IMG/VR virus record: IMGVR_UViG_3300009545_000018
Span: 62,001-126,000 of that record
DNA length: 64,000 nt
Strand: one strand, 5' to 3'
Shown here: positions 14,206 to 61,932 of the stretch, in pieces
How positions within the stretch are numbered: position 1 is the first letter of the stretch
How the letters are laid out: each line of letters opens with the position of its first letter
Notes under the pieces: model-generated
Seen by the model: only the letters and a program-made list of their open reading frames with translations
Databases searched by the model: none
What the model was told of the DNA's origin: nothing
Position numbers and translations under genes: made by a program

Positions 14206-14679
14206 ATGAAGTATTCAAAAGAATTACTATCTAAACTAGTTTCTGAATGTACTACTGTTGCAGAGCTAATGAGAAAGTTAGGACTCCAACAATCTGGAGG
14301 AACACATTCATTTTTAACTAAAAGAATAAAATCATTTAGTATTGACACATCTCATTTTGTTGGTTCTGCTTTTAATGCGGGACTAAATCATGTAGGCGGT
14401 CCAGAGAAACTATGTTCAACAGATGTTTTAGTCCTAGATAGGCTTAACGGTCAAAGAGAGAAATCTTTTAGATTAAAGAGAGCATTATTAGAATCTAACA
14501 TAAAAGAAGAGTGTGAACAATGTGGTGTGAGTACTATTTGGAATAATAAACCAATTACACTTCATATTGATCATAGAGATGGTAATGGTCTAAATAATTG
14601 TATAGAAAATTTAAGGTTCCTTTGTCCTAATTGTCATTCTCAAACGGACAATTATGGATCTAAAAATATTGGAAAATAA
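14206..14679 (+). CDS. HNH homing endonuclease
   Basis: CEQC...LHIDHRDG...N..ENLRFLCPNCH. Confidence 0.9.
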   Translation: MKYSKELLSKLVSECTTVAELMRKLGLQQSGGTHSFLTKRIKSFSIDTSHFVGSAFNAGLNHVGGPEKLCSTDVLVLDRLNGQREKSFRLKRALLESNIKEECEQCGVSTIWNNKPITLHIDHRDGNGLNNCIENLRFLCPNCHSQTDNYGSKNIGK

Positions 14680-16298
14680 TGTCAGAAGAATCCCTTATAG
14701 AAACCCGTCGCCAGAAGCATATTAAAGCTAATGGTGGAACTTACCCCATTGCTAATGATAGTAATTCAATTGATGATATCATTGGGCATAATTTAATTAT
14801 GCGGTTTAAACAACCAGAATCTGACATTAAAACAACTATCTGCTTCTCTGATTTAGAAGGAGAAGAACTCGTTAAGGTTCATGGCAGACTAACCAGTATC
14901 AGAAATACTGGCGGCATTACTTTTCTTAAAATTAAAGATAATACTGGTGCAATACAAATAATTGTTTCAAAAAAAGAATTATCTAATTATAAAGATTTAG
15001 CTAATTTAGATTTAGGCGACATTGTTGAAGTCGAAGGTAAAGTGGTTTTTTCTAAGACCAAAGAATTATCGGTTCTTATGTCTAGCTGGATCTTATTGTC
15101 TAAAGCTATTAGACCTTTACCAGAAAAATATCATGGCATTACAGATGTAGAATTAAAATATCGCAAGAGATATCTAGATTTAATTTGTTCGGATGAGTCA
15201 AGAGAGATCTTTAAATTAAGGTCACTTGTTATTTCTTCCATAAGAAATTTTTTAATTCAGGACGGTTTTATGGAAGTAGAGACTCCAACATTAAATATAG
15301 TTAATAGTGGGGCTAATGCCAAACCATTCCAGACACACCACAATTCTTTAGATATGGATCTTAATTTGAGAATTGCTCCGGAGCTTAATCTCAAGCGATT
15401 AATTGTGGGAGGATTTGATAAAGTATTTGAAATTGGTAAGAATTTTCGTAATGAAGGGCTGTCTACTAGACATAATCCAGAATTTACTATGCTTGAATTT
15501 TATGAGGCTTATAGTAATTTTGGTAATTTAATAGATAAAACAATGCGGCTTTTCAATTATATTGAGGGTGATTTAGAAACTTACTATCAAAGTAAACCAG
15601 AAGAAAAAGTATTATTTGATAAATGGAAAACTGCTCGCCCCTTTTCTTTTTCCTTTTGGAAAGAATTACCTATGTGGGATTTAGTACTTCATGCTTGTAA
15701 TAAAGCAGAAATATTAATTCATCACGGAATTCATCCTCTAGTAAAAGACAGCCCAACAGATGGTGCTCCTTTATTAGAAAGAATTAATTTAAATAATGAA
15801 AGATTATTAAAAATTGATTGGAAAGATTTGTTAGACAAATTAAATCTGGAAAAAGATAATGGTCAAATAATAGGATTATTATTTGAATATCTTGCTGAAC
15901 CATTTCTTACTGAAGATTATAGAACTGCTGATGGTACACATTCTTTGCCAGTCATTGTAACGCAATTCCCCACAGAGCTTTGTCCTTTAGCCAGAGCTTA
16001 TGATAAAGCCCCAACATTATGTGAGCGTTTTGAGCTTTACATAGATGGCAAAGAAATTGCTAATGCCTTTCAAGAACTTAATGATCCAGTAGAACAAAGA
16101 AAAAGGTTTGATGAACAGCTAGTAAGCAATCAAAGAGATGCTATGGATATCGACAATGATTACATTGAAGCTTTAGAATATGGCATGCCTCCAACTGTTG
16201 GTTTGGGTCTAGGAATAGATCGTTTGGTAATGTTATTAACTAATTCATCATCCATTAAAGATGTAATTTTATTTCCTACAATGAAGCCATTAAAGTAA
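14679..16298 (+). CDS. lysS: class II lysyl-tRNA synthetase
   Basis: OB fold, YRKRYLDLI, LRIAPEL.LKRL, FRNEGLSTRHNPEFT, GMPPTVGLGLGIDRL. Confidence 0.95.
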   Translation: MSEESLIETRRQKHIKANGGTYPIANDSNSIDDIIGHNLIMRFKQPESDIKTTICFSDLEGEELVKVHGRLTSIRNTGGITFLKIKDNTGAIQIIVSKKELSNYKDLANLDLGDIVEVEGKVVFSKTKELSVLMSSWILLSKAIRPLPEKYHGITDVELKYRKRYLDLICSDESREIFKLRSLVISSIRNFLIQDGFMEVETPTLNIVNSGANAKPFQTHHNSLDMDLNLRIAPELNLKRLIVGGFDKVFEIGKNFRNEGLSTRHNPEFTMLEFYEAYSNFGNLIDKTMRLFNYIEGDLETYYQSKPEEKVLFDKWKTARPFSFSFWKELPMWDLVLHACNKAEILIHHGIHPLVKDSPTDGAPLLERINLNNERLLKIDWKDLLDKLNLEKDNGQIIGLLFEYLAEPFLTEDYRTADGTHSLPVIVTQFPTELCPLARAYDKAPTLCERFELYIDGKEIANAFQELNDPVEQRKRFDEQLVSNQRDAMDIDNDYIEALEYGMPPTVGLGLGIDRLVMLLTNSSSIKDVILFPTMKPLK

Positions 16299-37823: not shown

Positions 37824-39404
37824 TTGATTATGGTATCTAAAAATTTATTTAAGTCTACAGGTTCAGTTAAGAAAGCAATTAAACCAGTTAATGCTGTTAA
37901 TAATGCGGGCGGTGTGGCTTATACTATGGATGATAAGGCTGCCTTAGCGCAACTTGCCATGACTGGTTGTTTTAATGGAACTTATTATGTTGATGCTAAA
38001 GATCAACTTAATCAAGTTGTTGCTCTTGCTAATAAGCTTCCAGTAGAGTTCGTGGCAAAGTTAGCAGTATATGCTCGCCAAGAAGGTTTTATGAAGGATA
38101 TGCCTGCAGTATTAGCCGCAGTTGTTGCTAGCAAAGATACTGTTCTTTTATCCAAGATCTTTCCAAAGGTTATTGATAATCCAAAAATGGTTCGTAACTT
38201 TGTACAAGTTATTCGTTCTGGAGTAACAGGCAGAAAAAGTTTGGGAACCCGTCCTAAGAAATTAATTCAAAATTATTTGAATTCATTAACTGATGAGCAG
38301 TTGTTTAAGGCTGATGTAGGTAATAGCCCTTCATTACAAGATATTATTAAGTTAGCTCGTCCTAAGCCAGCTACTAAGAATCGCTCTGCTTTGTATGGTT
38401 ATTTGCTAGACAAGGAATATAATCCAGAAGACTTATGTTCCTTGGTTCAAGAGTTTGAATCTTTCAAAAAAGAAATGAGTTTGGATATTCCAAATGTTCC
38501 ATTTCAAATGTTAACAGCTTTGCCATTAACTGATAAGCATTGGAGCAAGATTGCTGAAAATGCAACCTGGAATCAAACCAGAATGAATTTAAATACTTTT
38601 GCTCGTCATAAGGTATTTGAAGATGCTACTACTTTAAACCTATTGGCTGAGAGATTAGCTGATTCTTCACAAATTGCAAAAGCAAAGGTATTCCCATATC
38701 AATTGTTTGCTGCATTTAAAAATGTAACTGCAGATGTTCCTAAGAAATTAACTAATGCTTTACAAAAAGCAGCGGATGCTTCGCTGGAAAATATTCCAGC
38801 TATTGAAGGTGAAGTTCACGTTTTAGTTGATGTATCAGGCAGCATGAGTAGCCCAGTCACTGGTAATCGTGGTTTTGTCACTAGTACTATGCGTTGTATT
38901 GATGTAGCAGCCTTAATGGCTTCTGCATTAATGCGCAAGAATGAAGATACTAAGGTATATCCATTTGATACTAGAGTTCATAATCATTCATTGAATCCAA
39001 TGGATTCAGTGATGACTAATGCGGCAACTCTTGCTGCATTTGGTGGTGGAGGAACTGATTGTGGTATGGCGTTAGAGAATTTAAATAAGCAGAAAGCCAA
39101 AGGCAATCTTGTTATTTATGTTTCTGATAATGAGTCTTGGGTAGATACTACTCCTAATTCCTATTATTCTCAAAGAGGTACTAAGGTAATGGAAGAGTGG
39201 AATAAATATAAAGCTCGTAATCCAAAAGCCAAATTGGTTTGTATTGATGTCACTCCTAATAAAACCACTCAAGCTCATAATAGAGAAGATATAATCAACA
39301 TTGCAGGATTTTCTGATCAAGTATTCGATGTTATTGCATTATTCCAAAAATTTGGCAATAATAAAGATCTTTGGGTTCAAACCATTGACTCAGTAGAAAT
39401 GTAA
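37824..39404 (+). CDS. rsr: Ro60 / TROVE-domain RNA-binding protein
   Basis: NNAGGVAY, LAQLAMTG.FNGTYY, YARQEGFMKDMP, MNLNTFARH, vWA DVSGSM, GGGGTDC, SDNESW. Confidence 0.93.
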   Translation: MIMVSKNLFKSTGSVKKAIKPVNAVNNAGGVAYTMDDKAALAQLAMTGCFNGTYYVDAKDQLNQVVALANKLPVEFVAKLAVYARQEGFMKDMPAVLAAVVASKDTVLLSKIFPKVIDNPKMVRNFVQVIRSGVTGRKSLGTRPKKLIQNYLNSLTDEQLFKADVGNSPSLQDIIKLARPKPATKNRSALYGYLLDKEYNPEDLCSLVQEFESFKKEMSLDIPNVPFQMLTALPLTDKHWSKIAENATWNQTRMNLNTFARHKVFEDATTLNLLAERLADSSQIAKAKVFPYQLFAAFKNVTADVPKKLTNALQKAADASLENIPAIEGEVHVLVDVSGSMSSPVTGNRGFVTSTMRCIDVAALMASALMRKNEDTKVYPFDTRVHNHSLNPMDSVMTNAATLAAFGGGGTDCGMALENLNKQKAKGNLVIYVSDNESWVDTTPNSYYSQRGTKVMEEWNKYKARNPKAKLVCIDVTPNKTTQAHNREDIINIAGFSDQVFDVIALFQKFGNNKDLWVQTIDSVEM

Positions 39405-39737: not shown

Positions 39738-40061
39738 ATGAAAACCATGTTGTTTGAAAAAACTATTAATTTAGTTAAAACTTTAAGAGAAACATTCACA
39801 ACTCGATGTTTACATAATCAAAAATTGCCCCTTTTTAGTTGGTTACATAGAAATTCTAGTAACTTTTCGAATGAAGAGTTTGAAGAGTTTTGGAAATTTT
39901 TAGTAATTTTATTTAAATATAAATATAAGGATATGAGCTTATTTTATGAAGCAGGAGAGTCTCCATTAGAAATGTTTGATTTTAGAGCAAACAAAGATCA
40001 AATCAATGACTTTATTTCTTTATTAGAAAATAAAATTAATAAATTGAAAGCTTTTATTTAA
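39738..40061 (+). CDS. small KAF-tag protein
   Basis: ends KLKAFI. Confidence 0.65.
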   Translation: MKTMLFEKTINLVKTLRETFTTRCLHNQKLPLFSWLHRNSSNFSNEEFEEFWKFLVILFKYKYKDMSLFYEAGESPLEMFDFRANKDQINDFISLLENKINKLKAFI

Positions 40062-40897
40062 TGATTAAAAGAAATGGTATTGAAATTAAGACTGCCCAAG
40101 CTCCAAATATAGTAGCAGCAAAAGATACTTTAAATATTCTTAAGAATAAAAATTATCTTGTTAAAGATAAGATCATAGATATTTCAGTGGCATTAGATAA
40201 TTCAATTAAAAATACTAAGTTATATTTGCCAGAAGATTGTTTTAATAGTAAAAATAATTTAATTAAACCTACTATAGAGGTAACAAATGAAACTACTACC
40301 TCTGCTGGGTTAAGATTATTAAATAGTGGTTTAGAAAATATTGTAGCTTTGAATTTTGCCTCAGCTAGAAATGTTGGGGGCGGATTTTTAGCGGGGGCAG
40401 TTGCCCAAGAAGAAGATTTGTGTCGGTGTTCTGGATTATATCTTTGTATTAAAAGCAAACCTATCTTTTATAATAAAAACATTTTATGTGATGATACTTT
40501 CTATACTAATCATATTATTTACTCACCCAATGTTCCTTTCTTTCGTAATGATAATCTAGATCTTTTAGAAGAGATATTCCACATTTCTATTATTTCTGCG
40601 CCCGCACCTAATGTTAGAGCTATGGAGAATGTTGATGAAGATAATTTAAGAAGCATATTAGAAATAAGGGCAGCTAGAATTTTACAGATTGCTATTGAAA
40701 ATAATCATGAAAATATTATCTTAGGAGCTTGGGGCTGTGGTGCTTTTGGTAATGATTCTAAAATGATAATTGAGGTTTTTCAAAAGGTATTAAATAGATA
40801 TCCTCATTTCAAACATGTTTGTTTTGCCGTCTTTGATAATAAAATAAATGCCCCTATTTTCAATGCATTTAAAGAAGCATTTGAAAATAATGAATGA
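40061..40897 (+). CDS. TIGR02452 / bacterial PARG-like ADP-ribose glycohydrolase
   Basis: LNFASARNVGGGF..GAVAQEEDLCRCS, LGAWGCGAFGND. Confidence 0.9.
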   Translation: MIKRNGIEIKTAQAPNIVAAKDTLNILKNKNYLVKDKIIDISVALDNSIKNTKLYLPEDCFNSKNNLIKPTIEVTNETTTSAGLRLLNSGLENIVALNFASARNVGGGFLAGAVAQEEDLCRCSGLYLCIKSKPIFYNKNILCDDTFYTNHIIYSPNVPFFRNDNLDLLEEIFHISIISAPAPNVRAMENVDEDNLRSILEIRAARILQIAIENNHENIILGAWGCGAFGNDSKMIIEVFQKVLNRYPHFKHVCFAVFDNKINAPIFNAFKEAFENNE

Positions 40898-44167: not shown

Positions 44168-45170
44168 ATGGATCAAAAAGATTTAATAATACAAGAATTA
44201 CATAATATCATTTATAAATATGGCGTCAAAGCTTTAATGGAATTTGAGTCTAGGTTTCCGTGTGATCAATTAAGTTGTGTTAAAGTTCCATATAATCATA
44301 TTCCTAACAATTCAAAATTCATAGAGAGAAATTTTGGATATGGAATTTTTGTTTGGCAAGGAATTTCTTATAATGATGCATATTTATTTAGAATTCAATC
44401 ATATGAGAAATTTTGGATCGATTGGAATCAATTTAAACGTTATCTAGAATTATTAGCATTTACATGAAGACTAAAAAAGATATTGCAGATTTACTTCGAC
44501 CTATGCTTGAAAAATATGGAAGAGAATATCTTGTTAATTTTAACTTATTGATTAATAACGTTACTTGGGACGGCACTCTTAGTGAGTATGTTTCTATTCC
44601 TTTTAATAACATAAGTGAACACAGAGTTAATTGTAGTTCTTTTTTAGAGCTTAAACAACATATTAATAATTTAGAGATGAAAAGAACTTGGGGAAATTCG
44701 TGGACATATATTGAAGTTCCATCTGATTGTAATGATTTTTTTCATCTTAGAATTGATGGTGTTGAAAATTTTTACATTAAGTGGGAAAAATATCAAAGAT
44801 ACTTAAATTTGAAAGCTTTTATATAATGACAACAGAAGAAGATTTTAGAAAAAGTTTATCTTGTATTATTGAAAAATTTGGTCCAGAACATTTTAGTGTT
44901 ATTTTAACAATTGCACAAAATTCAAGCTTTTATTTTAAAAGTAAAAATATGTTATTAATACCATTTAAATCTAATTCTTCGTTTAAAAGAGTAAATGTTA
45001 AATATGAGGAGTGTGCCGCTGTTGTATGGAAAAATTATGCTAATCATAAATATTTTCCATTTCCTCCAGATTGTGATGATTGGTATTGTATGCTTGGTGA
45101 TTCTTTTGAAAGTATACTAACTCTGTATAATGTTGGTAGCAAAATGATAAAAATGAAAGCTTTTATATAA
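44168..45170 (+). CDS. array of three KAF-tag proteins (44168-44467, 44464-44826, 44826-45170)
   Basis: ends ELLAFT, NLKAFI, KMKAFI; mutually similar N-termini. Confidence 0.7.
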
Positions 45171-45664
45171 TGACAATTGGAATATTTGCTGGCAGTTTTG
45201 ATCCTATTACTTTAGGGCATTTAGATATTATAAATCGTAGTTTAACTTTTTTAGATAAATTAATAGTGTTAATAGCAGTTAACCCAAATAAGAAAACCAC
45301 TTTCTCTTTAAATAAAAGAAAATCTTTAATTATAGAGAGTCTTTTCGAAACATCAACGAGATCTGCAGATGTTATAGTGGATTCATATGATGGATTGGTT
45401 GTTAATTATGCTAAGTTACATGGAGCTTCAGTTTTGATTAGAGGTGTTCGTACCTCAACAGATTTTGAATATGAAACTAATTTAGCTAATGGTAATAGAT
45501 TATTAGCACCAGAGATTGAAACTGTCTTTATACCAACTCGTCCAGAATTATCTGTAGTATCTTCTTCCATGGCTAAAGAAATTAATAAATGGAATGGTGA
45601 TGTATCTAAATTAGTTACAGTTAAAGTTAAAAATGCTCTGAATGAAATTGTGAGTTTAAAATGA
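45170..45664 (+). CDS. coaD: phosphopantetheine adenylyltransferase
   Basis: AGSFDPITLGHLDII, IRGVR..DFEYE, VSSSMAKE. Confidence 0.93.
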   Translation: MTIGIFAGSFDPITLGHLDIINRSLTFLDKLIVLIAVNPNKKTTFSLNKRKSLIIESLFETSTRSADVIVDSYDGLVVNYAKLHGASVLIRGVRTSTDFEYETNLANGNRLLAPEIETVFIPTRPELSVVSSSMAKEINKWNGDVSKLVTVKVKNALNEIVSLK

Positions 45665-46212: not shown

Positions 46213-46302
46213 GGGGAAGTAGCTCAGCCGGCCAGAGCGCTTTACTGTTTTATAAAACGAATAGTGAAGAGGTCGATGGTTCAAATCCATCCTTCCCCAC
46301 CA
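46213..46302 (+). tRNA. tRNA with 20-nt anticodon loop, identity uncertain
   Basis: GGGGAAG/CTTCCCC+ACCA, canonical D and T arms; anticodon arm extended to about 11 bp. Confidence 0.75.
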
Positions 46303-46374
46303 TGAATCAAATGCAGATAAGATTACATTTAACAGTTAATTAAAAAAGCATCTTATCAATAATTTGTTGATTCA
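46303..46374 (+). ncRNA. scaffold-family ncRNA copy A
   Basis: TGAATCAA/TTGATTCA, GATAAGAT/ATCTTATC, ATGC and TACATT motifs. Confidence 0.7.
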
Positions 46375-46380
46375 TTTAAT

Positions 46381-46653: not shown

Positions 46654-47622
46654 TTGAACTGTTATATATTCTGTATGATTGTCATACAGAAACGATCTTT
46701 TTCTTTAGAAGAGTTAAGAGAAATATTCAAAAGTTCATTGTCAAAGCAAGATGTTGCCATAAAGTTAGGTTTTACTTATAGTAATGGGAAAGTTTATAAA
46801 AAAATTGAGAAACTTTCTATTGAATATAATTTATCGACGGATCATTTTGATCCATTTTTAAGTCAAAGATTAAATACAAAATTTCCTAAAATAGAAAAAG
46901 AATGTCCTATATGCGGTAATTTATTTGAAACTAAACATGGACATCGTGATGAAAAAATTACTTGCTCAATATCATGCTCTAATACTTATTTTGCTCCTAG
47001 TAAACACACTGAATTATCAAATTTAAAAAGATCGTTAAAGCTTTTAAAAAATTCAAAAAATGAAACTGTCAATATAATAAAAGTTCGTAAAAAACGTAAA
47101 AAGAATTTTAAATTAAAAGCTGTTGTTTTATATATTAAGTCTTGTGAATTTTGTGATTATGATTTTGAAACTTATAATAAAAATAAAAGATTTTGCAATA
47201 TATCATGTCAAATCAAACATAATTGGGAAGATCCCAATTATCGTATTAATATTATAAATAAAGCTAATGAAAGAGTTACAAATGGAACCCATAATGGGTG
47301 GTCATCAAGATCAAAACTAAAACCTTCTTATGCTGAACAATATGTTATCAATCTTTTAGATGAGTTAAAAATAACAAATATTACTCGAGAATACAAAATT
47401 AACAAATGGTTTATTGATTTTGCTGATATAGATAGAAAATTAGCTTTAGAAATAGATGGTAAACAACATGAATTACCAGAACGTAAGGCTTCGGATCAAG
47501 TTAAAGATCAATATTTAAAAGATAATGGTTGGACCATTTTAAGAATAAAATGGAAAAAGATAACAGCAGAATTTAGAGAAGAATTAATAAAAGTTTTGCA
47601 AAATTTCACAAGGATCATATAA
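46654..47622 (+). CDS. homing endonuclease, Vsr/DUF559-like
   Basis: CPIC and CxxC Zn motifs, IDFAD..LALEIDGKQH..D..L..GWTILRIKW. Confidence 0.82.
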   Translation: MNCYIFCMIVIQKRSFSLEELREIFKSSLSKQDVAIKLGFTYSNGKVYKKIEKLSIEYNLSTDHFDPFLSQRLNTKFPKIEKECPICGNLFETKHGHRDEKITCSISCSNTYFAPSKHTELSNLKRSLKLLKNSKNETVNIIKVRKKRKKNFKLKAVVLYIKSCEFCDYDFETYNKNKRFCNISCQIKHNWEDPNYRINIINKANERVTNGTHNGWSSRSKLKPSYAEQYVINLLDELKITNITREYKINKWFIDFADIDRKLALEIDGKQHELPERKASDQVKDQYLKDNGWTILRIKWKKITAEFREELIKVLQNFTRII

Positions 47623-48402: not shown

Positions 48403-48484
48403 TGCGGGGTAGAGGAGTATGGTTATCTCACCAGCCTCATAAGCTGTGGTATACGTGGGTTCAAATCCCACCCTTCCGCAACCA
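48403..48484 (+). tRNA. tRNA-Met(CAT)
   Basis: CT-CAT-AA loop, TTCAAAT T-loop, ACCA; slightly irregular acceptor junction. Confidence 0.8.
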
Positions 48485-48552
48485 CTGGATGGTGGTTACC
48501 AAATCCGCAAAGGGGTATAGAAATATACTCGGAGGATTGAATCCACTATTAT

Positions 48553-48687
48553 GCAATTCTGGTATAATGGCATTACTGACTCTAAAAAGAGTATCACTTA
48601 CAAAGAAACCTGTGAGGCTACCAGGAAATTATTGTAAGAATAACGCCTTGCCTGGCGTAGATGTTGGTTCGATTCCAACGGATTGCA
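48553..48687 (+). ncRNA. tRNA-like RNA with multi-hairpin central insertion
   Basis: GCAATTC/GGATTGC, D arm, GTTGG-TTCGATT-CCAAC; about 80 nt of hairpins replace anticodon/variable arm. Confidence 0.6.
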
Positions 48688-48691
48688 TTAA

Positions 48692-48782
48692 GTGATGTTT
48701 GATAAGTAATCACGCCAGAAACATGATTTATCATGTTTGCCCTGATCAGCCTGGTAGTTAGGTGCAAATCCTAAGCATCACA
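48692..48782 (+). ncRNA. tRNA-like RNA with branched anticodon arm
   Basis: GTGATGT/GCATCAC, TTAGG-TGCAAAT-CCTAA, AAACATGA/TCATGTTT hairpin inside CCAG/CTGG. Confidence 0.55.
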
Positions 48783-48798
48783 ACAACTGAGTTTATAT

Positions 48799-49079
48799 GC
48801 CCGAATCCCTATATTGGTTAAGACATATAGACAATAGTCCGGTCTTAGGCTACCATTAAGGAGTAATCCTTTTAGAGACCACTGCTTCGGTGTGGGCAAA
48901 CCCGGCATTTAGGTGGAAAGCCTAATAAATTTTGCTTGATTAAATAGTTTCTTGCTACAAGATCAACGGTGTACAACGAATCTTGCTATTTAATTGGGAA
49001 GTCTTATAATTGTGGACTTGGTGAAACAGGTATAAGGCGAATTACGCTCGATATTGGATAAAACTAACATTGGGCGCCA
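48799..49079 (+). ncRNA. 281-nt structured RNA ending in GCCA
   Basis: GCCCGA/TTGGGC terminal stem plus GCCA; GTAA, cTTCGg, GCAA tetraloops. Confidence 0.55.
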
Positions 49080-49143
49080 TGAATCAAATCCGTATAGGAA
49101 TACATTCGGAAAAAATAAATCTTATACACTACTTGTTGATTCA
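49080..49143 (+). ncRNA. scaffold-family ncRNA copy B
   Basis: TGAATCAA/TTGATTCA, GTATAGGA/TCTTATAC, TACATT. Confidence 0.7.
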
Positions 49144-49148
49144 ATTAT

Positions 49149-49225: not shown

Positions 49226-49337
49226 TGTAACAAATGCCAGGGCAGCATTACATTTATTGGAATTAAATCCGATGAGGCTCGACTCCTCTTAAGGTCCGGT
49301 GACAGGCAAAACATGTTGCTCATTATTTGTTGTTACA
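49226..49337 (+). ncRNA. scaffold-family ncRNA copy C
   Basis: TGTAACAA/TTGTTACA, GGCAGCAT/ATGTTGCT, TACATT; cargo includes GAGG-CTCGACT-CCTC. Confidence 0.7.
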
Positions 49338-49539: not shown

Positions 49540-49591
49540 TGCCCACTAACTTAATTACATAAAAGTAAGGTTGTCGGGGCGCCAAATTTAC

Positions 49592-49666
49592 GTTCTGGTC
49601 GTCTAAATAATTAGGACATCTCCGCGAAAGGGGAAGATATTGGAGAATTACCAATCTGGAGCGCCA
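49592..49666 (+). ncRNA. non-canonical tRNA-like RNA
   Basis: GTTCTGG/CTGGAGC+GCCA, T-loop AGAATTA, anticodon loop GCGAAA. Confidence 0.6.
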
Positions 49667-49753
49667 TAAGTTAGTGGCTGGAAATCATTTAAGCGAGTTC
49701 AAATGCAATAACAGTCCGCCTAATTGCTCGTATATTAGGTAACTTAATTTTAT

Positions 49754-49830
49754 GCCCCTGTCGTCGTAAAAAGTCAGGACATCTCCAGTAATAGGAGAAG
49801 ATGTTGGAGAATTGCCAACTGGGGGTGCCA
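49754..49830 (+). ncRNA. non-canonical tRNA-like RNA, paralog of 49592-49666
   Basis: GCCCCTG/TGGGGGT+GCCA, TCTCC/GGAGA, T-loop AGAATTG. Confidence 0.6.
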
Positions 49831-50132
49831 AAGGCAAGTAAGGACCAGGAAGCCTTATGAGCTGCTGGTTTTTCATATAGGGAACTAGCCTGGTTAGTCC
49901 TATATGAGAACCAACCAATGTCTTTAAATAAAGAAATTTATATAAGGACACCATGATTAATTTGTGCAGCTGACTTATATTGGATTTCGCGATCTGATAT
50001 ATGAGTGCTGGAAAATACGGAAAGTTGGAAAACTGATGCACACCGTATAAGTTAACTAAATCACTAACTGTTATTATCTACGCGAATAGATAAAAACAAA
50101 GTAATTAGTTAATTATAATTAATCAAAAACTT

Positions 50133-50226
50133 TAGCAAATGCAGTAAGGATTACATTGGTTATAGTCAATCGAAAGATTGATGGTGGGTATCGATTCCCA
50201 CAGTATCTTTACAAAACTTGTTGCTA
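50133..50226 (+). ncRNA. scaffold-family ncRNA copy D
   Basis: TAGCAA/TTGCTA, GTAAGGAT/ATCTTTAC, TACATT; cargo GNRA hairpin plus GTGGG-TATCGATT-CCCAC. Confidence 0.7.
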
Positions 50227-50230
50227 TTAT

Positions 50231-50367
50231 TCCGAGGTACGTCTAATGGTAAGACACGCGGCTGTGGGAACTATAGGTTAATAATAAGTCCCGTTCGATT
50301 CGGGCAGTTCCAAGAATAACCGCGCGGTGGTAACACTTTGTAGGTTCGAGTCCTACCCTCGGAGCCA
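50231..50367 (+). tRNA. tRNA-Asn(GTT)-like gene with 51-nt insertion in the anticodon
   Basis: TCCGAGG/CCTCGGA+GCCA; CGCGG-CTGT[50266-50316]TAA-CCGCG. Confidence 0.75.
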
Positions 50368-50557: not shown

Positions 50558-51330
50558 ATGATTTCAAAATTAACAATCAAATCTTATGGAGTGACAGTAA
50601 CTCTTCCCAGTGAAATTCTAATTTTAGAAGATTGTATCTGGGCTAAAACTGGTGAACATTTAGCTTTAGGAAAAGACAAAAATATTATGGGTAATGATTG
50701 TTTTATTGTCCTTAGAAAAAACGGAGTTGTTATTTCTGGACCTTCTCCTTTAATTCATTCGGTTGGAGCAAATAGTTTAATTTATCAAGAGTGTTCGGTA
50801 GAAAAATATTATAAAATGAAAGCATTTTTGTAATGATCAAATATGTTGATGATAACGGTAAAGAAAAAATTTTACCTGAAAAAATAGTTATACTAAAATG
50901 TCCTGATAGTTGGCTTATTGAGCCTGGAGATTATATAGAATTTATTCATACATATTATCTTCATATGAGGATCTCCAGCTTTGAAATCAAAGTTTTAAAA
51001 GGATATCATAAGAATAAAATATTTGATTTACTCTTTAGTCATTTATCTAAGATTGAATATGTAAGCATAGAAAAGTTTGAAAAACTAAAGGCGTTTGTTT
51101 AAATGGAAACCAAGTGGATTTTAGTAACACAACAAAACTCTGTTTACTATAATAAAATCTTAGAATTAAAAGAAGGTTGGACATCAACCATTTATAATGG
51201 GACTATTGTTTGGTTTATTGAGTCAGTAAATGGTCAAGTTAGACATTATCCGGATTGGTTTGAGTTAAACGATTTGCCAACACATACAGTAGTAACAAAG
51301 GATGCCCTTAATTTATTAGCCTTTTTATAA
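50558..51330 (+). CDS. array of three KAF-tag proteins (50558-50833, 50833-51102, 51103-51330)
   Basis: ends KMKAFL, KLKAFV, NLLAFL. Confidence 0.7.
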
Positions 51331-51336
51331 AAAACT

Positions 51337-51579
51337 TTAGATGAATGCCGCAATGGAATACATATACAACCGATAGCTGAATGTCGCAAGACATTCAATA
51401 TCTCCGATTTCATAAAAGAGATATGAACCAACCTAAAGGAATTCCTATAAGGATAAACTATGTGACTGACAAACTTGAAGCCAGTTAAAGCTCAAGTCCT
51501 CTATGGTATTATTAGGATAAGATATACTGTGCTATTGGATAAAATTAATCGCACTTTCTATTGCATTCTTGTCATCTAA
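51337..51579 (+). ncRNA. scaffold-family ncRNA copy G (large cargo)
   Basis: TTAGATGA/TCATCTAA, ATGCC, GCAATGGAA/TTCTATTGC, TACAT, CTTG. Confidence 0.62.
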
Positions 51580-51591
51580 TTAACTTTTCAT

Positions 51592-51720
51592 TTAAATGAA
51601 TGCCGATTCGGGAATACATTAAACACAAAGATACTGCAGCATGTGCCAGGCTAATCCACATGTACCTTAGGAGTACTCAGGGTAAAGTGTACCGACTTCT
51701 CAATCACCTTTGTCATTTAA
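51592..51720 (+). ncRNA. scaffold-family ncRNA copy H
   Basis: TTAAATGA/TCATTTAA, ATGCC, GATTCGGGAA/TTCTCAATC (imperfect), TACATT, TTTG. Confidence 0.62.
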
Positions 51721-51721
51721 C

Positions 51722-52962
51722 ATGAATTACTTAAAACACACATTAGATAACGGCACAGTATTAGAAATACCAGAAGAATTTATGGTATTAGATAATTTAC
51801 CATCAGAAGATCTACATTACAAAGTAGAATTAATTCTTGATTTTATTAGAGGCTGGGTATTTAAAATAACCCATATAAATGGTTTAGAACTAACTCAATA
51901 TAAAGAAGATCCAACATGGATTTGTTATTTTAGTCCAGAAAAGATTTTTAATAAAAAAATTATACCATGTTCACTTGAAAAATTTAACAATATGAAAGCA
52001 TTTTTATAATGTCAAAAGAAGAAAAACCATTATCACCTTATGAGATAAGAAGATTAGGTCATTGCAAAGAAACAGAGCAGTGTGTTGATGATCTATATTG
52101 TAATTGTCCTTGTTTACCTTGTTCTAAGCAAGATTGTTTTAGACCAGGATGTAAATGTGGTAGAACTCATCCATATAAAAATTAATGTACTTACATATCC
52201 ATGATAAAGATGTTCCATCTTCTATTTTAGTTTTAGAAGACTCAAAAACTCACACCATTGAAAAGAATTCTCATTTTGTTTTTAGAAAAATTAAGTATAA
52301 TGAATATTGTGTTGATTTTTTTAATGGTAAAGATAATCGTTATTCTTATGCAAGATATTCAGAAGATGATTTATATCGTATGTTTTTTGATGGCAAATTA
52401 AAATATAAAGAATTTTCTTTAGCCCAGTTTAATAAAATAAAAGCATTTTTATGAAATATTATATTATTGAGGATACAGTAGTTCCAAGTGAGTTCATTAT
52501 AATTCATGATACAGATTTATGTAGAATTTATAATATTTATCCAGAGTTTAATAGAAATATTTATACTCATAAGAATTTTTTTGATTATATAAGCTACGAT
52601 CTTGATTATAATTTTATTTCGATTGCTACCATGCCAGGCAGTCAATTACTAAGTTATATTGATAATAATAAGTTATTTCCAATAGAAAAGTTTAATAGTT
52701 TAAAGGCTTTCTTATGAAATATATTCAAACTGCTAAATATAATTATCCAGAAGAAATATTTGTAACACAAAGTTTCTTTAGACACGAGTGGACTAATAAA
52801 CACTTGGTATTAAAACAATATAATGAATATGTATTAAGTGTATTTTTAATAAATGGGGAAGAGCCCTCACATCCAATGGCTATTACCAATAATTTCATTC
52901 ATGAGGCTAATTTTTTAGAAATGTCTTTAGAAAGATATTTAAAGATTAAATCTTTCTTATAA
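51722..52962 (+). CDS. four KAF-tag proteins (51722-52009, 52185-52454, 52451-52717, 52714-52962) and a Cys-rich 58-aa ORF (52009-52185)
   Basis: ends NMKAFL, KIKAFL, SLKAFL, KIKSFL; overlapping start/stops. Confidence 0.7.
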
Positions 52963-53066: not shown

Positions 53067-53142
53067 CCGCTATGAGTCTCTTGGTTGAGCTGAAGGTTCT
53101 TATAAAGCTTTTGGACAAGTTCAAATCTTGTATGGCGGACCA
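53067..53142 (+). tRNA. degenerate tRNA-like element
   Basis: CCGCTAT/ATGGCGG+ACCA, ACAAG-TTCAAAT-CTTGT; weak D and anticodon arms. Confidence 0.5.
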
Positions 53143-53197
53143 TGAGGAATATTCCTCACTTTGCACATGGTATCCATGTGATAATTTAGGAGCACTC

Positions 53198-53476
53198 ATG
53201 TTAGATAATAGAGATGGTTATATTTGTCCCGATCAGCGTGTTGGATTTAATAATCATTCAGGTTTGAATTTTTCTGATATATCTTCAGAAGAATATCGAA
53301 TTTATGAATTTGAAAGCGGAAGATCAATCTTAATAAATAAACCATTAAGATTAAATGTCTCACCAAGTGGTGGACATAGGGTATTTGATGAAGATAAAGT
53401 ATCTCATTATATTCCTAAAGGTTGGATTCATCTTAAATGGAAAGCCAGAGAAGGTCAACCTAATTTTGTGAAATGA
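53198..53476 (+). CDS. hypothetical phage protein
   Basis: AGGAG SD before ATG 53198; DISSEEYRIYEF..SGGHRV..SHYIPKGW; the track's earlier start overlaps tRNAs. Confidence 0.7.
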   Translation: MLDNRDGYICPDQRVGFNNHSGLNFSDISSEEYRIYEFESGRSILINKPLRLNVSPSGGHRVFDEDKVSHYIPKGWIHLKWKAREGQPNFVK

Positions 53477-53516
53477 ATTTATCAAGCAATAATATTAAGT
53501 TATTATTGCTTTGACT

Positions 53517-53586
53517 ATGGACAAATTAGATAAGGATTACATTTTATTGGAAAAACAAACATCTTTGTCAACTACTTGTTGTCCAT
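53517..53586 (+). ncRNA. scaffold-family ncRNA copy E
   Basis: ATGGACAA/TTGTCCAT, GATAAGGAT/ATCTTTGTC, TACATT. Confidence 0.7.
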
Positions 53587-53589
53587 TAT

Positions 53590-53666
53590 GGTACATAGGC
53601 GAATCTAGTGAACGCAAAACCCTGAAGAGGTTTGGAGCCCAGAGCGTAACTTGGGATGTACCACCA
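53590..53666 (+). tRNA. tRNA-Phe(GAA) with atypical T-loop
   Basis: GGTACAT/ATGTACC+ACCA, AAACC-CTGAAGA-GGTTT, T-loop AGCGTAAC. Confidence 0.8.
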
Positions 53667-53782
53667 AGAAAGGTAGCGCCTTTCAGCCTGCTCACATGGA
53701 CGAAACTGTGACGTTCCCTCTTGGCTGTATAGCTCAAGTAGTAAAAGGGACAGCCGGTTCACCTGGTTGGAAACGGTGATAA

Positions 53783-53859
53783 AGTCATCTAGTTTAATGG
53801 TAAAACGCCATCACATTTATGTGCCGGCGGAGATCTGGGTTCGAGTCCCAGGATGATTT
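53783..53859 (+). tRNA. degenerate tRNA with expanded anticodon loop
   Basis: AGTCATC/GATGATT, canonical D and T arms, 13-nt loop, no CCA. Confidence 0.55.
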
Positions 53860-53862
53860 CTA

Positions 53863-54013
53863 TGAAAACAAATGCCCGTACAAGGATTACATTCATTATA
53901 GGAACGTGAAGAAAGTTCGATTCTTTCCGCAGCGACCAAACTAAAAACAATTGCTGCGTGGTGTATTGGTTAACACACGAAAAAAACATCTTTGTCAATT
54001 TTTGTTGTTTTCA
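53863..54013 (+). ncRNA. Y RNA-like ncRNA: scaffold copy F with circularly permuted tRNA domain
   Basis: TGAAAACAA/TTGTTTTCA, ACAAGGAT/ATCTTTGT; inside: T arm, CGCAGCG-ACCA, linker, TGCTGCG, D arm. Confidence 0.78.
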
Positions 54014-54033
54014 ATTATTTAAATAGGTGAAAC

Positions 54034-54366
54034 ATGAAATGTAAGATTCATCCAAAATATAAAGCCATATATCAGCCTAGGAAAACTAATAAGTTTCCAG
54101 ACGGTTGTATGGAATGTATTAAAATTTTTAACAAAAAACATAAAGTTTTTCTCTGTACAAGGAATCTTAGTAAAAATAATAATTTGCTTTTTAAAAAGGG
54201 TAAACATTATCAATTTATTTGTAAACAAAAAGTTATTAGTCATATGCCTTTTTCCAAATCACCGTATGATTATTTAATATATATTCGAAATGAAAGAGGG
54301 GATTACTCTTTTTTTAGTAAAGATAAAAATTTTCCTTATTTTTGGATAAAAGATTATTTCGAATAA
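54034..54366 (+). CDS. hypothetical protein
   Basis: AGG SD, MKCKIHP. Confidence 0.5.
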   Translation: MKCKIHPKYKAIYQPRKTNKFPDGCMECIKIFNKKHKVFLCTRNLSKNNNLLFKKGKHYQFICKQKVISHMPFSKSPYDYLIYIRNERGDYSFFSKDKNFPYFWIKDYFE

Positions 54367-54372
54367 CACTAT

Positions 54373-54449
54373 CGACCTCTAGCTCATTTGGTTAGAGCGA
54401 CCGCCTGATACGCGGTAGGTGCGGGGATCATAGCCCCGGGGGTCGACCA
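54373..54449 (+). tRNA. tRNA-Ile(GAT) with atypical T-loop
   Basis: ACCGC-CTGATAC-GCGGT, CGGGG-ATCATAG-CCCCG, ACCA. Confidence 0.87.
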
Positions 54450-61026: not shown

Positions 61027-61932
61027 TTATTTAGTTAAATGATATTTATTTCTTGTTTTTAATCTATTTCTAATGGCTGTGCCATGAACTCCAAGTTGTT
61101 TTGCTACTTGCTCTATATTTGATAATTTTATCATCTCAATTAATTTATCATCATTTGGCCAATTTATTTTAGTATTAATATTTAATTTTTTTAATTTTCG
61201 TTTATCAATTATAGGAGATTTTTCATAAAAATCAATAATATTATATGCTAATTGCTCTTTTCTTTTTAAGCTAAGTTGCGATTTATCATAATAAATTAAA
61301 GATAAAAATTTATAAGCATTTTTTCCAATAACATATAAGGAATAACACTTATTTTTTTGTATGATTGGCTTGTTATCAACAATATTTGGTTTTGATTGTT
61401 TTTTCTCAGTTATTCCGGCTTTTATATTAATTGATGCCAAATAATTTTGAATTTTATTCAAGAAAATTAAAGAAGATGAAGTTAAACTACAAACTCTTTT
61501 AATTGATGTTTTATTTTTATATATTCCTATAGATCCATCACCATCAATACATCCTCTTAAAAAATCTCGTATATATATTTCTGGAATATTTGGGAAATCA
61601 ATAATTAATGTTTTTCTAGGAAAACAGCCATGGCTAATTAACCATTGAGCAATTTCATTGCGTATTATTCTAATTCCATAATAATTTTCTTTAAATTTAT
61701 GTAATTTGAGATTTGTACCAATAATATCTTTAATAGAATTAAGCCAGTCTTGATCGCAAGAACTTATTTGACAAGCAAATGTGTTTTTATTGTTTTTATA
61801 AACACACCCATCAGTATAAAACACTCCTAATAAATAATAGGAAATTTCATTTTCATTGTAAAATATGTTGTAATTATAATTATATTTTATACTCATAACA
61901 TGAGATATATCACCACTAACTATTTTTATCAC
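61027..61932 (-). CDS. LAGLIDADG homing endonuclease (double motif)
   Basis: YLLGVFYTDGCV and FLRGCIDGDGSI, C-terminal HTH; start may be 61896. Confidence 0.88.
   Translation of the reverse strand: MIKIVSGDISHVMSIKYNYNYNIFYNENEISYYLLGVFYTDGCVYKNNKNTFACQISSCDQDWLNSIKDIIGTNLKLHKFKENYYGIRIIRNEIAQWLISHGCFPRKTLIIDFPNIPEIYIRDFLRGCIDGDGSIGIYKNKTSIKRVCSLTSSSLIFLNKIQNYLASINIKAGITEKKQSKPNIVDNKPIIQKNKCYSLYVIGKNAYKFLSLIYYDKSQLSLKRKEQLAYNIIDFYEKSPIIDKRKLKKLNINTKINWPNDDKLIEMIKLSNIEQVAKQLGVHGTAIRNRLKTRNKYHLTK

What the first reader, a model, noticed from the sequence alone, without database searches (positions are those of the whole stretch)
53863..54013. Circularly permuted tRNA inside the scaffold: Y RNA (YrlA-like) architecture that keeps CCA
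Seen: the T arm (GAAAG-TTCGATT-CTTTC, 53911-53927) and acceptor 3' strand CGCAGCG+ACCA (53928-53938) come before the acceptor 5' strand TGCTGCG (53952-53958) and D arm (GTGT/ACAC). The anticodon arm is replaced by the long scaffold stem formed by the RNA ends. Established: bacterial YrlA Y RNAs mimic tRNA with D, T and loop-closed acceptor arms attached to the Ro60-binding stem; permuted tRNA and tmRNA genes are also known. Inference: a phage Y RNA. The retained ACCA might allow RNase P/3' processing into a two-piece, aminoacylatable, anticodon-less tRNA mimic.
Basis: partly seen in the sequence, partly recalled or inferred. Interest (0 to 1): 0.9.

Follow-up and report, generated by a model that had tools for sequence, protein, structure and literature searches.

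The report
Phage Y RNA mimicking a permuted tRNA
This 151-base stretch is a gene for a Y RNA of the known YrlA type, a small RNA folded like a rearranged tRNA that partners the Ro60 protein this giant phage also encodes. It is a new example of a known family, not a new kind of RNA.

Summary
Positions 53863-54013 (+) fold into a long stem made by the two RNA ends. The stem carries a T arm, a 7-bp loop-closed acceptor stem followed by ACCA, and a D arm, in circularly permuted tRNA order.

The same phage contig (IMG/VR, 448 kb) encodes a full-length Ro60/Rsr orthologue at 37824-39404. A covariance model built only from relatives in other Ro60-encoding phage contigs finds this element as the best hit in the window (70.6 bits, E about 1e-14). 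All five helices covary across the 67 model matches. Sibling elements are matched by Rfam YrlA (RF02553) at E about 1e-8. Rfam's own model does not detect the window copy.

The window holds six more copies of the Ro60-binding scaffold, with short (YrlB-like) or other apical modules, interleaved with tRNA genes.

The encoded NCCA recurs in five homologues, including a mycobacteriophage. Their acceptor loops run from 8 to 97 nt and are otherwise unrelated. That fits RNase P opening and a free CCA end, as already shown for Mycobacterium smegmatis YrlA. Aminoacylation is unsupported.

Verdict: a real feature and a new member of a known kind. Interest is moderate.

The parts
53863..54013 (+). Whole YrlA-like Y RNA gene (element F)
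   Evidence: Leave-window-out model R2: 53865-54011, 70.6 bits, E 1.7e-14, model positions 1-136. Fold.
53863..53871 (+). Basal stem (stem 1), 5' strand UGAAAACAA. It ends in CAA, the variant of the CGA of the YrlA CGAAUGC motif.
   Evidence: Pairs with 54005-54013 (9 bp). The helix covaries across the family (helix 1).
53872..53879 (+). 5' side of the internal loop, AUGC + CCGU. AUGC is the conserved motif shared with the Rfam YrlA/YrlB consensus.
   Evidence: Conserved in all seven window copies and in relatives.
53880..53887 (+). Stem 2, 5' strand ACAAGGAU
   Evidence: Pairs with 53988-53995. Covaries across the family (helix 2).
53888..53904 (+). Conserved UACAU motif followed by a variable (V) region
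   Evidence: UAC(A) is conserved in relatives and in the Rfam YrlA consensus.
53905..53907 (+). Junction helix, 5' strand CGU. It corresponds to the top of the anticodon stem.
   Evidence: Pairs with ACG 53977-53979. It matches the 3-bp helix in the Rfam YrlA structure line. ARAGORN uses it as the anticodon stem on the re-permuted sequence.
53911..53927 (+). T arm, GAAAG UUCGAUU CUUUC
   Evidence: Helix 3 covaries.
53928..53934 (+). Acceptor stem, 3' strand
   Evidence: 7/7 pairs with 53952-53958. Helix 4 covaries at all 7 pairs.
53935..53938 (+). Encoded discriminator + CCA (ACCA)
   Evidence: NCCA sits at the same position in L004, L003, L010 (twice) and mycobacteriophage L027.
53939..53951 (+). 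Remainder of the acceptor loop. U at -1 lies before the predicted RNase P site 53951/53952.
   Evidence: Loop length and sequence are not conserved among homologues (8-97 nt).
53952..53958 (+). Acceptor stem, 5' strand
53961..53976 (+). D arm, GUGU AUUGGUUA ACAC, preceded by U8 G9 (53959-53960)
   Evidence: U8 and A14 are each present in 24 of 26 family members.
53977..53979 (+). Junction helix, 3' strand ACG
   Evidence: See 53905-53907.
53988..53995 (+). Stem 2, 3' strand AUCUUUGU
53996..54004 (+). 3' side of the internal loop, ending in the conserved UUG
   Evidence: YUUGU(C/U)G is conserved in the family and in the Rfam YrlA/YrlB consensus.
54005..54013 (+). Basal stem, 3' strand
37824..39404 (+). 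Ro60/Rsr orthologue (526 aa, TROVE + vWA), the presumed protein partner
   Evidence: Pfam PF25045 1.4e-15 and PF05731 7e-8. PDB matches: phage phiLo Ro60 9KOP 2e-14 and D. radiodurans Rsr 2NVO 5e-12 over residues 25-507.
53783..53860 (+). tRNA-Met(CAU) gene ending 2 nt before the Y RNA. Probably the same transcript.
   Evidence: No promoter-like or convincing terminator-like site lies between them.
46303..46376 (+). Scaffold copy A, short apical loop (YrlB-like)
49080..49146 (+). Scaffold copy B, short apical loop (YrlB-like)
49226..49337 (+). Scaffold copy C, with a module containing a T-arm-like hairpin
   Evidence: 37.1 bits.
50132..50227 (+). Scaffold copy D, with a GAAA-capped hairpin and a T-arm-like hairpin
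   Evidence: 37.2 bits.
51593..51719 (+). Scaffold copy G, with a 62-nt apical insert
   Evidence: 30.3 bits. Fold.
53518..53586 (+). Scaffold copy E, short apical loop (YrlB-like)

Best explanation
Positions 53863-54013 are the gene for a YrlA-class Y RNA of an uncultivated phage of about 448 kb that encodes its own Ro60.

Shown by sequence comparison:
- The RNA ends pair into a two-helix stem. Its internal loop carries the family motifs: 5' C(A/G)AAUGC, and 3' YUUGU(U/C)G.
- The distal end folds as a circularly permuted tRNA body: junction helix, T arm, 7-bp acceptor hairpin, D arm.

Inferred from what is established for Y RNAs:
- The stem is the Ro60-binding module.
- The tRNA-like module is the effector-binding or protective module.
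- The RNA tethers or gates the phage Ro60. It may couple Ro60 to a host 3'-5' exonuclease such as PNPase, as in D. radiodurans and Thermus phage phiLo.

Inferred from gene layout:
- The RNA is made as part of the tRNA-array transcript. tRNA-processing nucleases release it.

Inferred, at about even odds:
- The module has a 7-bp acceptor stem, an encoded ACCA and U at -1. RNase P therefore probably cuts between 53951 and 53952. The 13-nt tail would then be trimmed back to A53938.
- The result would be a two-piece RNA with a free CCA end, held together by about 27 bp, as documented for M. smegmatis YrlA.
For: - A full-length Ro60 orthologue lies on the same strand.
- The same scaffold and module occur in other Ro60-encoding phage loci. 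They lie 21 nt after the Ro60 stop in L013 and about 700 nt after it in L025. They lie just upstream of Ro60 in a mycobacteriophage.
- Model R2 was built from 10 relatives and no window sequence. It ranks this element first in the window at 70.6 bits, E 1.7e-14.
- Covariation on the model-fitted alignment: 95.6% of cells paired against 63.5% in shuffles and 38-56% in slid controls. 27 of 29 pairs change on both sides.
- RNAalifold on a plain MAFFT alignment recovers four helices. 22 of its 24 pairs show compensatory change. Stem 2 covariation is listed.
- Rfam YrlA RF02553 matches siblings L010 8687-8820 (44.8 bits, E 1.3e-8, full length) and 8304-8439. Its consensus carries CGAAUGC, CUAC and CUUGUCG.
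- tRNA-like positions are kept: U8, A14, G18G19, the UUCGA T loop and G53-C61. The 15:48 pair switches between A:U and G:C across the family.
- For the CCA and RNase P step: NCCA occurs in 6 homologues with unrelated loops of 8-97 nt, and 5 of the 6 have U at -1. The M. smegmatis precedent is.
- For co-transcription: the scaffold copies abut tRNA ends. No promoter-like or terminator-like site intervenes. D. radiodurans Yrn2-tRNA-Yrn1 is a polycistronic precedent.
Against: - The Rfam YrlA and YrlB models give no hit on any window copy, even at E<=10.
- The literal GNCGAAN0-1G motif is absent from this copy, which reads AACAAAUG.
- The element lies 14.5 kb from Ro60, outside the 4-kb criterion of Chen et al. 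2014.
- The predicted fold is not unusually stable (z = -1.78).
- The 15:48 pair is U:A here, not the usual R:Y.
- There are no expression, binding, cleavage or modification data for this phage.
- The six NCCA members are homologous, so they are not six independent observations.
- Two members with the same GUGU D stem lack CCA (L018, L028).
Confidence: 0.85

Rival explanations
1. The halves are remnants of two adjacent tRNA genes, or a tandem tRNA pair misread: the 3' part of one tRNA followed by the 5' part of the next. There would be no function as a unit.
For: - The phage has many tRNA genes, and several encode CCA.
- Chen et al. warn that tandem tRNAs mimic YrlA in model searches.
- In viral contigs the pattern T-loop...NCCA...UGGUGUA is mostly produced by tandem tRNAs.
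Against: - There is no D or anticodon arm upstream of the T arm. There is no anticodon or T arm downstream of the D arm.
- The two acceptor strands pair 7/7 with each other. Among 121 pattern matches in viral contigs only 4 reach 6/7 or better.
- The unit sits inside the conserved YrlA scaffold. It is conserved with compensatory changes in other phages.
Confidence: 0.03
2. A structured spacer, or tRNA-like punctuation. On this view the element exists only to direct RNase P/Z processing of the tRNA-array transcript and to free the downstream mRNA (ORF 54034-54366). It would have no Ro60 partnership.
For: - It lies 2 nt after tRNA-Met and 20 nt before an ORF start.
- Scaffold copies generally abut tRNAs.
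- RNase P-recognised tRNA-like structures that define RNA ends are known (introduction).
Against: - Punctuation needs only the tRNA-like part. It does not explain the conserved stem motifs shared with Rfam YrlA/YrlB.
- It does not explain the restriction of hits to Ro60-encoding loci, or adjacency to Ro60 in L013, L025 and L027.
- It does not explain the short scaffold copies that have no tRNA-like part.
Confidence: 0.07
3. A true permuted tRNA gene, as in Cyanidioschyzon merolae. It would be matured through a circular intermediate into a decoding tRNA.
For: - The 3' half, NCCA, an intervening sequence and the 5' half are in the order seen in permuted tRNA genes.
- ARAGORN accepts the re-permuted sequence as a cloverleaf.
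- The YrlA literature raises the possibility for some YrlAs.
Against: - No anticodon stem-loop exists. The position is occupied by a 3-bp helix and the 65-nt Y RNA scaffold.
- No bulge-helix-bulge motif or splicing endonuclease is evident.
- The scaffold is conserved as a stem with its own motifs, not as a removable leader/trailer.
Confidence: 0.02
4. A two-piece (permuted) tmRNA-like gene.
For: - The acceptor 3' strand plus CCA precedes the acceptor 5' strand, as in permuted ssrA.
- There is a weak tmRNA_permuted hit on a sibling (14.6 bits, E 1.3).
Against: - The element is only 151 nt, with no tag reading frame and no pseudoknots.
- ARAGORN and Rfam find no tmRNA here.
- A D arm is present, which tmRNA lacks.
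Confidence: 0.01

Closest known systems
YrlA (Y RNA-like A; Rfam RF02553; S. Typhimurium YrlA crystal structure 6CU1; Chen et al. 2014, Wang et al. 2018)
   Same: - The order of parts is the same: 5' stem strand, V region, T arm, loop-closed acceptor stem, D arm, 3' stem strand.
- The stem motifs are the same: AUGC, UAC and YUUGUYG.
- The partner Ro60 is encoded in the same genome.
- The family is already described as resembling a circularly permuted tRNA.
   Different: - The Rfam model does not detect this copy.
- The CGAA core reads CAAA, with a compensating U on the 3' strand.
- The D stem is GUGU/ACAC rather than the near-invariant GCUC/GAGC.
- The acceptor stem has 7 bp (6 in Salmonella) and is followed by an encoded ACCA.
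- The gene lies 14.5 kb from Ro60, inside a tRNA array.
Mycobacterium smegmatis YrlA, and the YrlA of cluster C mycobacteriophages (e.g. ScoobyDoobyDoo, L027 4082-4138)
   Same: - The acceptor stem has 7 bp.
- The mycobacteriophage copy has the same UG-GUGU...GCAC D arm and an encoded ACCA followed by a short loop.
- M. smegmatis YrlA is cut by RNase P, nibbled and CCA-tailed, giving a two-piece Ro60-bound RNA.
   Different: - The hosts and base composition are very different (about 60-65% GC against 31%).
- In M. smegmatis part of the CCA is added after transcription, whereas here it is fully encoded.
- The actinobacterial scaffold lacks the AUGC/UAC motifs.
YrlB (Rfam RF02565) and other short Y RNAs
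   Same: Window copies A, B and E share the GAAUGC...GGAUUAC...UUUGUCG hairpin layout of the YrlB consensus.
   Different: This applies to the neighbouring copies, not to the finding itself. None reaches E<=10 with the Rfam model.
Thermus phage phiLo Yrl1/Yrl2 with phiRo60 (PMC12135203)
   Same: - Phage-encoded Ro60 with phage-encoded Y RNA-like RNAs carrying the CGAA motif.
- Binding has been demonstrated, and a Ro60-Yrl-host PNPase complex forms.
- The window Ro60 matches phiRo60 (9KOP) at 2e-14.
   Different: The phiLo Yrls are described as stem-bulge-stem RNAs. The term 'tRNA-like' does not occur in that paper.
Circularly permuted tRNA genes (Cyanidioschyzon merolae; Soma et al. 2007, as cited)
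   Same: The 3' half with CCA precedes the 5' half. The acceptor stem is closed by an intervening sequence, and the ends pair.
   Different: There is no anticodon loop to restore, no evidence of circularisation, and the paired ends are a conserved protein-binding stem.

Membership tests
YrlA-class Y RNA | A Ro60/Rsr (TROVE) orthologue is encoded in the same genome | tested here: met
   Window 37824-39404, 526 aa. Pfam Ro60 vWA 1.4e-15 and TROVE 7e-8. Matches to solved Ro60/Rsr structures.
YrlA-class Y RNA | Gene within 4 kb of Ro60 and on the same strand (reporting criterion of Chen et al. 2014) | tested here: not met
   The strand is the same, but the element is 14,459 nt downstream of the Ro60 stop. 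The nearest scaffold copy (A) is 6.9 kb away. Homologues in L013, L025 and L027 do meet the criterion. This is a search criterion, not a structural definition.
YrlA-class Y RNA | 5' and 3' ends pair into a long stem interrupted by an internal loop | tested here: met
   9-bp and 8-bp helices. Both covary across the family (helices 1 and 2).
YrlA-class Y RNA | GNCGAAN0-1G motif near the 5' end (proposed Ro60 contact) | tested here: inconclusive
   This copy reads AACAAAUG, so the literal motif is not met. Relatives read GCCGAAUG or ACCGAAUG. The G of CGA pairs with the C of UUGUCG and covaries to A:U (pair 6-338: GC 41, AU 15).
YrlA-class Y RNA | T arm with a tRNA-like loop (U54 U55 C56 R57 A58, G53-C61) | tested here: met
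   GAAAG UUCGAUU CUUUC at 53911-53927.
YrlA-class Y RNA | Loop-closed stem in the acceptor position, between the T and D arms | tested here: met
   7 bp, 17-nt loop. All 7 pairs covary in the family (helix 4).
YrlA-class Y RNA | D arm with U8, A14, G18G19 | tested here: met
   UG + GUGU AUUGGUUA ACAC. The stem sequence differs from the GCUC/GAGC typical of most YrlAs.
YrlA-class Y RNA | tRNA tertiary pairs possible, e.g. the Levitt 15:48 pair as A:U or G:C | tested here: inconclusive
   Across the family: A:U in 13 and G:C in 4 of 26. This copy has U15:A48.
YrlA-class Y RNA | Match to the curated covariance model Rfam RF02553 | tested here: not met
   No hit at E<=10 on 53100-54400. Positive controls: mycobacteriophage 28.8 bits; siblings L010 44.8 and 43.4 bits. 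All are below the gathering score of 69.
YrlA-class Y RNA | Homology to confirmed family members by a model that excludes the candidate | tested here: met
   R2, whose seed includes the RF02553-matched L010 elements, gives 70.6 bits, E 1.7e-14, full length.
YrlA-class Y RNA | Bound by Ro60; pseudouridine 55 and dihydrouridine made by TruB/DusA | not testable with these tools
   Needs RNA from infected or expressing cells.
Permuted tRNA gene (decoding tRNA after circularisation) | An anticodon stem-loop is restored when the ends are joined | tested here: not met
   Joining the ends gives a 3-bp helix plus a 65-nt scaffold, with no 7-nt anticodon loop.
Two-piece tmRNA | Tag reading frame and pseudoknots | tested here: not met
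   151 nt only. No tmRNA call by ARAGORN or Rfam.

The most novel reading that the evidence does not exclude
The NCCA-encoding YrlA subclass comprises this element and its homologues in four other phage loci: three metagenomic contigs and a mycobacteriophage. On this reading it is obligatorily opened by RNase P and then aminoacylated. That would give an anticodon-less, Ro60-tethered charged tRNA mimic, which the phage would use in translation control or ribosome-linked RNA surveillance. The evidence excludes neither cleavage nor charging. It also shows no conserved synthetase identity elements in the acceptor stems.
Probability: 0.08. Interest if true: 0.8.

Novelty: new member of a known kind. 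Interest (0 to 1): 0.4.

Why it matters
- Ro60-Y RNA modules extend into uncultivated giant phages. There they are multiplied (seven scaffold copies in 8 kb here, and up to a dozen model hits in related loci) and woven into tRNA arrays.
- None of this is annotated. The curated Rfam models miss the AT-rich copies entirely, so phage Y RNAs are probably much under-counted.
- The comparative data add one modest new point. A subclass keeps an encoded NCCA next to a 7-bp acceptor stem while the rest of the loop drifts from 8 to 97 nt. This argues that the RNase P-opened, CCA-ended form seen once in M. smegmatis is a selected feature in several phage lineages, not a peculiarity of one bacterium.
- It also offers cloned-gene test material (Ro60 plus seven RNAs) for asking what the different apical modules recruit.

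Tried and rejected
- Rfam at gathering and at E<=10 gave nothing for any window copy. A control showed the family is in the library but narrow.
- blastn of the region against GenBank phages found no match.
- MAFFT on the six paralogues misaligned the inserts and was unusable.
- Model R1, built from the short copies, found the scaffold in relatives. It scored F at only 12.7 bits because of the 93-nt module.
- Four-sequence and 14-sequence MAFFT alignments misaligned stem 2. This was solved with a 10-sequence seed and a column-derived structure.
- An exact-pattern scan for the scaffold in viral contigs returned only the window's own contig.
- A scan for T-loop...NCCA...UGGUGUA returned mostly tandem tRNAs, so it could not measure how common the NCCA subclass is. 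It was kept only as an empirical null.
- Two reviews on bacterial Y RNAs were not held in the library.
- Promoter and terminator scans were uninformative.
- Thermodynamic z-scores of F and of the other copies are weak.
- Tandem-tRNA, permuted-tRNA, tmRNA and pure-punctuation readings were considered and rejected. See the rival explanations.

Full report
**1. What is there**

- T arm: GAAAG/UUCGAUU/CUUUC at 53911-53927.
- Acceptor 3' strand: CGCAGCG at 53928-53934, followed by ACCA at 53935-53938.
- A 13-nt A-rich remainder of the loop follows.
- Acceptor 5' strand: UGCUGCG at 53952-53958, giving seven pairs, one of them U-G.
- UG follows, then a D arm GUGU/AUUGGUUA/ACAC at 53961-53976.
- The two ends pair as 53863-53871 with 54005-54013 (9 bp) and 53880-53887 with 53988-53995 (8 bp). 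An asymmetric internal loop separates the two helices.
- A 3-bp helix (CGU 53905-07 with ACG 53977-79) closes the tRNA-like part.

The RNAfold centroid reproduces these helices. Stability is not exceptional (-32.2 kcal/mol, z = -1.78). ARAGORN and Rfam call no tRNA here, but both call a tRNA-Met gene ending 2 nt upstream.

When the halves are joined in tRNA order (53952-54013 + 53863-53938), ARAGORN in intron mode draws a cloverleaf. It treats the scaffold as a 65-nt insert where the anticodon loop should be.

A strict pattern for the module occurs once in the window. Dinucleotide shuffles gave a mean of 0.02 hits, with 6 of 300 shuffles scoring at least one.

**2. Context**

The window is positions 62001-126000 of IMG/VR contig 3300009545_000018 (447,763 bp; 30.8% GC). 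It is a tRNA-rich stretch of a very large phage genome, with 16 tRNAs by ARAGORN.

At 37824-39404, on the same strand, it encodes a 526-aa protein with Ro60 vWA and TROVE domains. The protein aligns over nearly its whole length with D. radiodurans Rsr (2NVO). It aligns over residues 29-437 with Thermus phage phiLo Ro60 (9KOP), and its C-terminal half aligns with a chain named RNA-binding protein RO60.

The stem that frames the finding is repeated. Seven copies lie on the + strand between 46.3 and 54.0 kb.
- A: 46303-46376
- B: 49080-49146
- C: 49226-49337
- D: 50132-50227
- G: 51593-51719
- E: 53518-53586
- F: the finding itself

All share CAAAUGC...stem...UACAUU at the 5' side and stem...YUUGUUG at the 3' side. 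The helices between them differ by compensatory changes. A, B and E have short apical loops. C, D and G carry other inserts, and C and D each include a T-arm-like hairpin. Only F has the full T/acceptor/D module. Several copies abut tRNA ends directly.

**3. Relatives**

Twenty-three other IMG/VR loci encode Ro60 proteins 43-68% identical to the window's. The best match among isolated phages is Myxococcus phage Mx1 at 49.9%.

A scan for T arm + complementary 7-nt strands + D arm found the same architecture inside the same scaffold in many of these loci: L003, L004, L007, L008, L010, L011, L013, L014, L018, L025 and Mx1. There the 5' motif reads (G/A)CCGAAUGC and the 3' motif reads CUUGUCG. In L013 the element starts 21 nt after the Ro60 stop. 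In L025 it lies about 700 nt after it.

A covariance model (R2) was built from ten of these relatives, with no window sequence and with the structure taken from column pairing. It ranks F first in the window at 70.6 bits, E 1.7e-14, aligned end to end.

Across 27 sources R2 finds 67 elements, in 18 sources. On that model-fitted alignment:
- 95.6% of cells pair, against 63.5% in shuffles and 38-56% when partners are slid.
- 27 of 29 pairs change on both sides.
- All five helices are supported.

An alignment not fitted to any model (MAFFT + RNAalifold) independently recovers stem 1, the T arm, the acceptor and the D arm. 22 of its 24 pairs are compensated.

**4. Identity with YrlA**

Chen et al. 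2014 define YrlA by three features: a 5' GNCGAAN0-1G motif, a stem made by the ends, and, in order, V, T, acceptor-like (loop-closed) and D stem-loops. The tRNA tertiary pairs include a covarying 15:48 pair. They found YrlA near Ro60 in 254 bacteria and 22 phages. Wang et al. [quoted passage not shown]

Rfam holds the family as RF02553.
- On a mycobacteriophage control it scores 28.8 bits.
- On two siblings of F in L010 it scores 44.8 and 43.4 bits (E about 1e-8, full length).
- Its consensus shows the same CGAAUGC, CUAC and CUUGUCG motifs.
- The YrlB consensus (RF02565) matches the layout of the short copies.

All these scores are below Rfam's gathering thresholds. No window copy is detected even at E<=10. 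The link from Rfam to F is therefore transitive, through R2.

In the window copies the G of CGAA is A. The paired C on the 3' strand is U, and this pair covaries across the family (GC 41, AU 15).

U8 and A14 are each present in 24 of 26 full-length members. The 15:48 pair is A:U in 13 and G:C in 4. F has U:A.

**5. The CCA**

Among full-length members, NCCA directly follows a 7-bp acceptor 3' strand in six elements:
- F (ACCA)
- its closest orthologue, L004 18130-18352 (ACCA)
- L003 9114 (GCCA)
- L010 8687 and L010 8836 (GCCA)
- Mycobacterium phage ScoobyDoobyDoo, L027 4082 (ACCA)

All six share a GUGU D stem. The rest of the loop is unrelated in sequence and measures 8, 8, 8, 17, 19 and 97 nt. 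Five of the six have U at -1, which from general knowledge is the nucleotide bacterial RNase P prefers. By my count of the loops listed, that compares with 6 of 18 in members without CCA, so the enrichment is weak.

None of the members with other D stems has CCA there. Two GUGU members lack it.

Because the six are homologous, this is retention rather than six independent events. Retention through such loop turnover, and from 31% to about 60% GC genomes, points to selection on NCCA.

The simplest reading is the one already demonstrated for M. smegmatis YrlA, which also has a 7-bp acceptor stem. RNase P cuts it in vivo and in vitro, the 3' fragment is nibbled, and it ends in CCA.

The acceptor stems of the six share no G3-U70 or other common identity element, as read from the strands listed. 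Nothing therefore points to a particular synthetase.

**6. Rivals**

- **Tandem tRNAs.** Chen et al. name this as the false-positive trap. It is excluded because neither half has the rest of a tRNA next to it. In addition the two acceptor strands are mutually complementary. Among 121 T-loop...NCCA...UGGUGUA matches in viral contigs, nearly all tandem tRNAs, only four reach 6/7.
- **A decoding permuted tRNA.** This is excluded by the lack of any anticodon loop.
- **tmRNA.** This is excluded by size and content.
- **A pure processing signal.** This cannot be excluded experimentally. It does not explain the conserved stem motifs, the short copies or the association with Ro60.

**7. Mechanism, with status**

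- Shown: the fold, its conservation and its family.
- Inferred from the family: the stem binds the phage Ro60. The tRNA-like module recruits or protects. The RNP modulates RNA decay or quality control, plausibly through host PNPase, as shown for phiLo Ro60-Yrl.
- Inferred from layout: the RNA is co-transcribed with tRNAs and released by tRNA-processing enzymes. No promoter-like or terminator-like site intervenes, and D. radiodurans provides a precedent.
- Inferred at about even odds: RNase P opens the RNA at 53951/53952, and the tail is trimmed to A53938.
- Unsupported: aminoacylation.

**8. Verdict**

This is a new, divergent member of the YrlA family in an uncultivated giant phage. Two points go slightly beyond the literature read here.
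- The expansion of Y RNA paralogues inside tRNA arrays.
- The conserved, fully encoded NCCA subclass.

Neither point is a new principle. Interest 0.4.

Noticed in passing
window 37824-39404 (+): Full-length Ro60/Rsr orthologue (TROVE + vWA). Relatives 43-68% identical occur in 23 other very large IMG/VR phage contigs, and one 49.9% identical in Myxococcus phage Mx1.
   Followed up: yes
window 46303-46376, 49080-49146, 49226-49337, 50132-50227, 51593-51719, 53518-53586 (+): Six further copies of the Y RNA scaffold, with short (YrlB-like) or different apical modules. C and D each carry a lone T-arm-like hairpin. Several copies abut tRNA 3' or 5' ends.
   Followed up: partly
window 46213-46302, 48552-48688, 50231-50367 (+): Three tRNA genes with 13-, 44- and 51-nt insertions at the anticodon loop, recognised as such only by ARAGORN in intron mode. 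The second was missed by the standard ARAGORN and Rfam gathering scans. Rfam found the third only in the permissive scan (39.3 bits). The nature of the inserts is unknown.
   Followed up: partly
window 48480-49080, 49540-50130, 53587-53782 (+): GC-richer non-coding blocks between tRNA genes. One has an internal 47-nt repeat (49629-49675 / 49793-49839). No Rfam family matched. The fold of 53587-53782 is not unusually stable (z = -0.12). Unexplained.
   Followed up: partly
L004 18207-18296: The closest orthologue of the finding carries a 97-nt insertion in the acceptor loop, directly after a conserved ACCA. The content of the insertion was not analysed.
   Followed up: no
L026 255-380 and 607-710 (Myxococcus phage Mx1, OR576727.2, about 45169-45294 and 45521-45624): Unannotated YrlA-like RNAs (103.7 and 46 bits with R2) in an isolated phage, 11.7 kb upstream of its TROVE gene and inside its tRNA array. 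The second overlaps an annotated 40-aa hypothetical CDS (locus 610-732).
   Followed up: partly
L027 4082-4143 and 4233-4303; L028 2293-2380 and 3360-3498; L029 7193-7272; L030 735-791: GenBank records of Mycobacterium, Streptomyces and Gordonia phages with 'Ro-like RNA binding protein' genes contain YrlA-like modules that are not annotated. In all four records the Ro gene sits beside or near tRNA genes.
   Followed up: partly
window 14679-16298, 6611-7753, 40061-40897, 46654-47622, 61027-61932: Other notable genes in the window:
- a class II aminoacyl-tRNA synthetase (Asp/Lys/Asn type)
- glutathionylspermidine synthase
- microbial-type poly(ADP-ribose) glycohydrolase
- a DUF559/restriction-endonuclease-like gene between tRNAs
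- a LAGLIDADG homing endonuclease on the minus strand
   Followed up: no
window 50784-52722: A series of small ORFs whose ends and starts share a repeated motif of about 35-55 nt (...AAAGCATTTTTATAATG..., families D1-D7). This suggests a tandem family of small paralogous genes.
   Followed up: no
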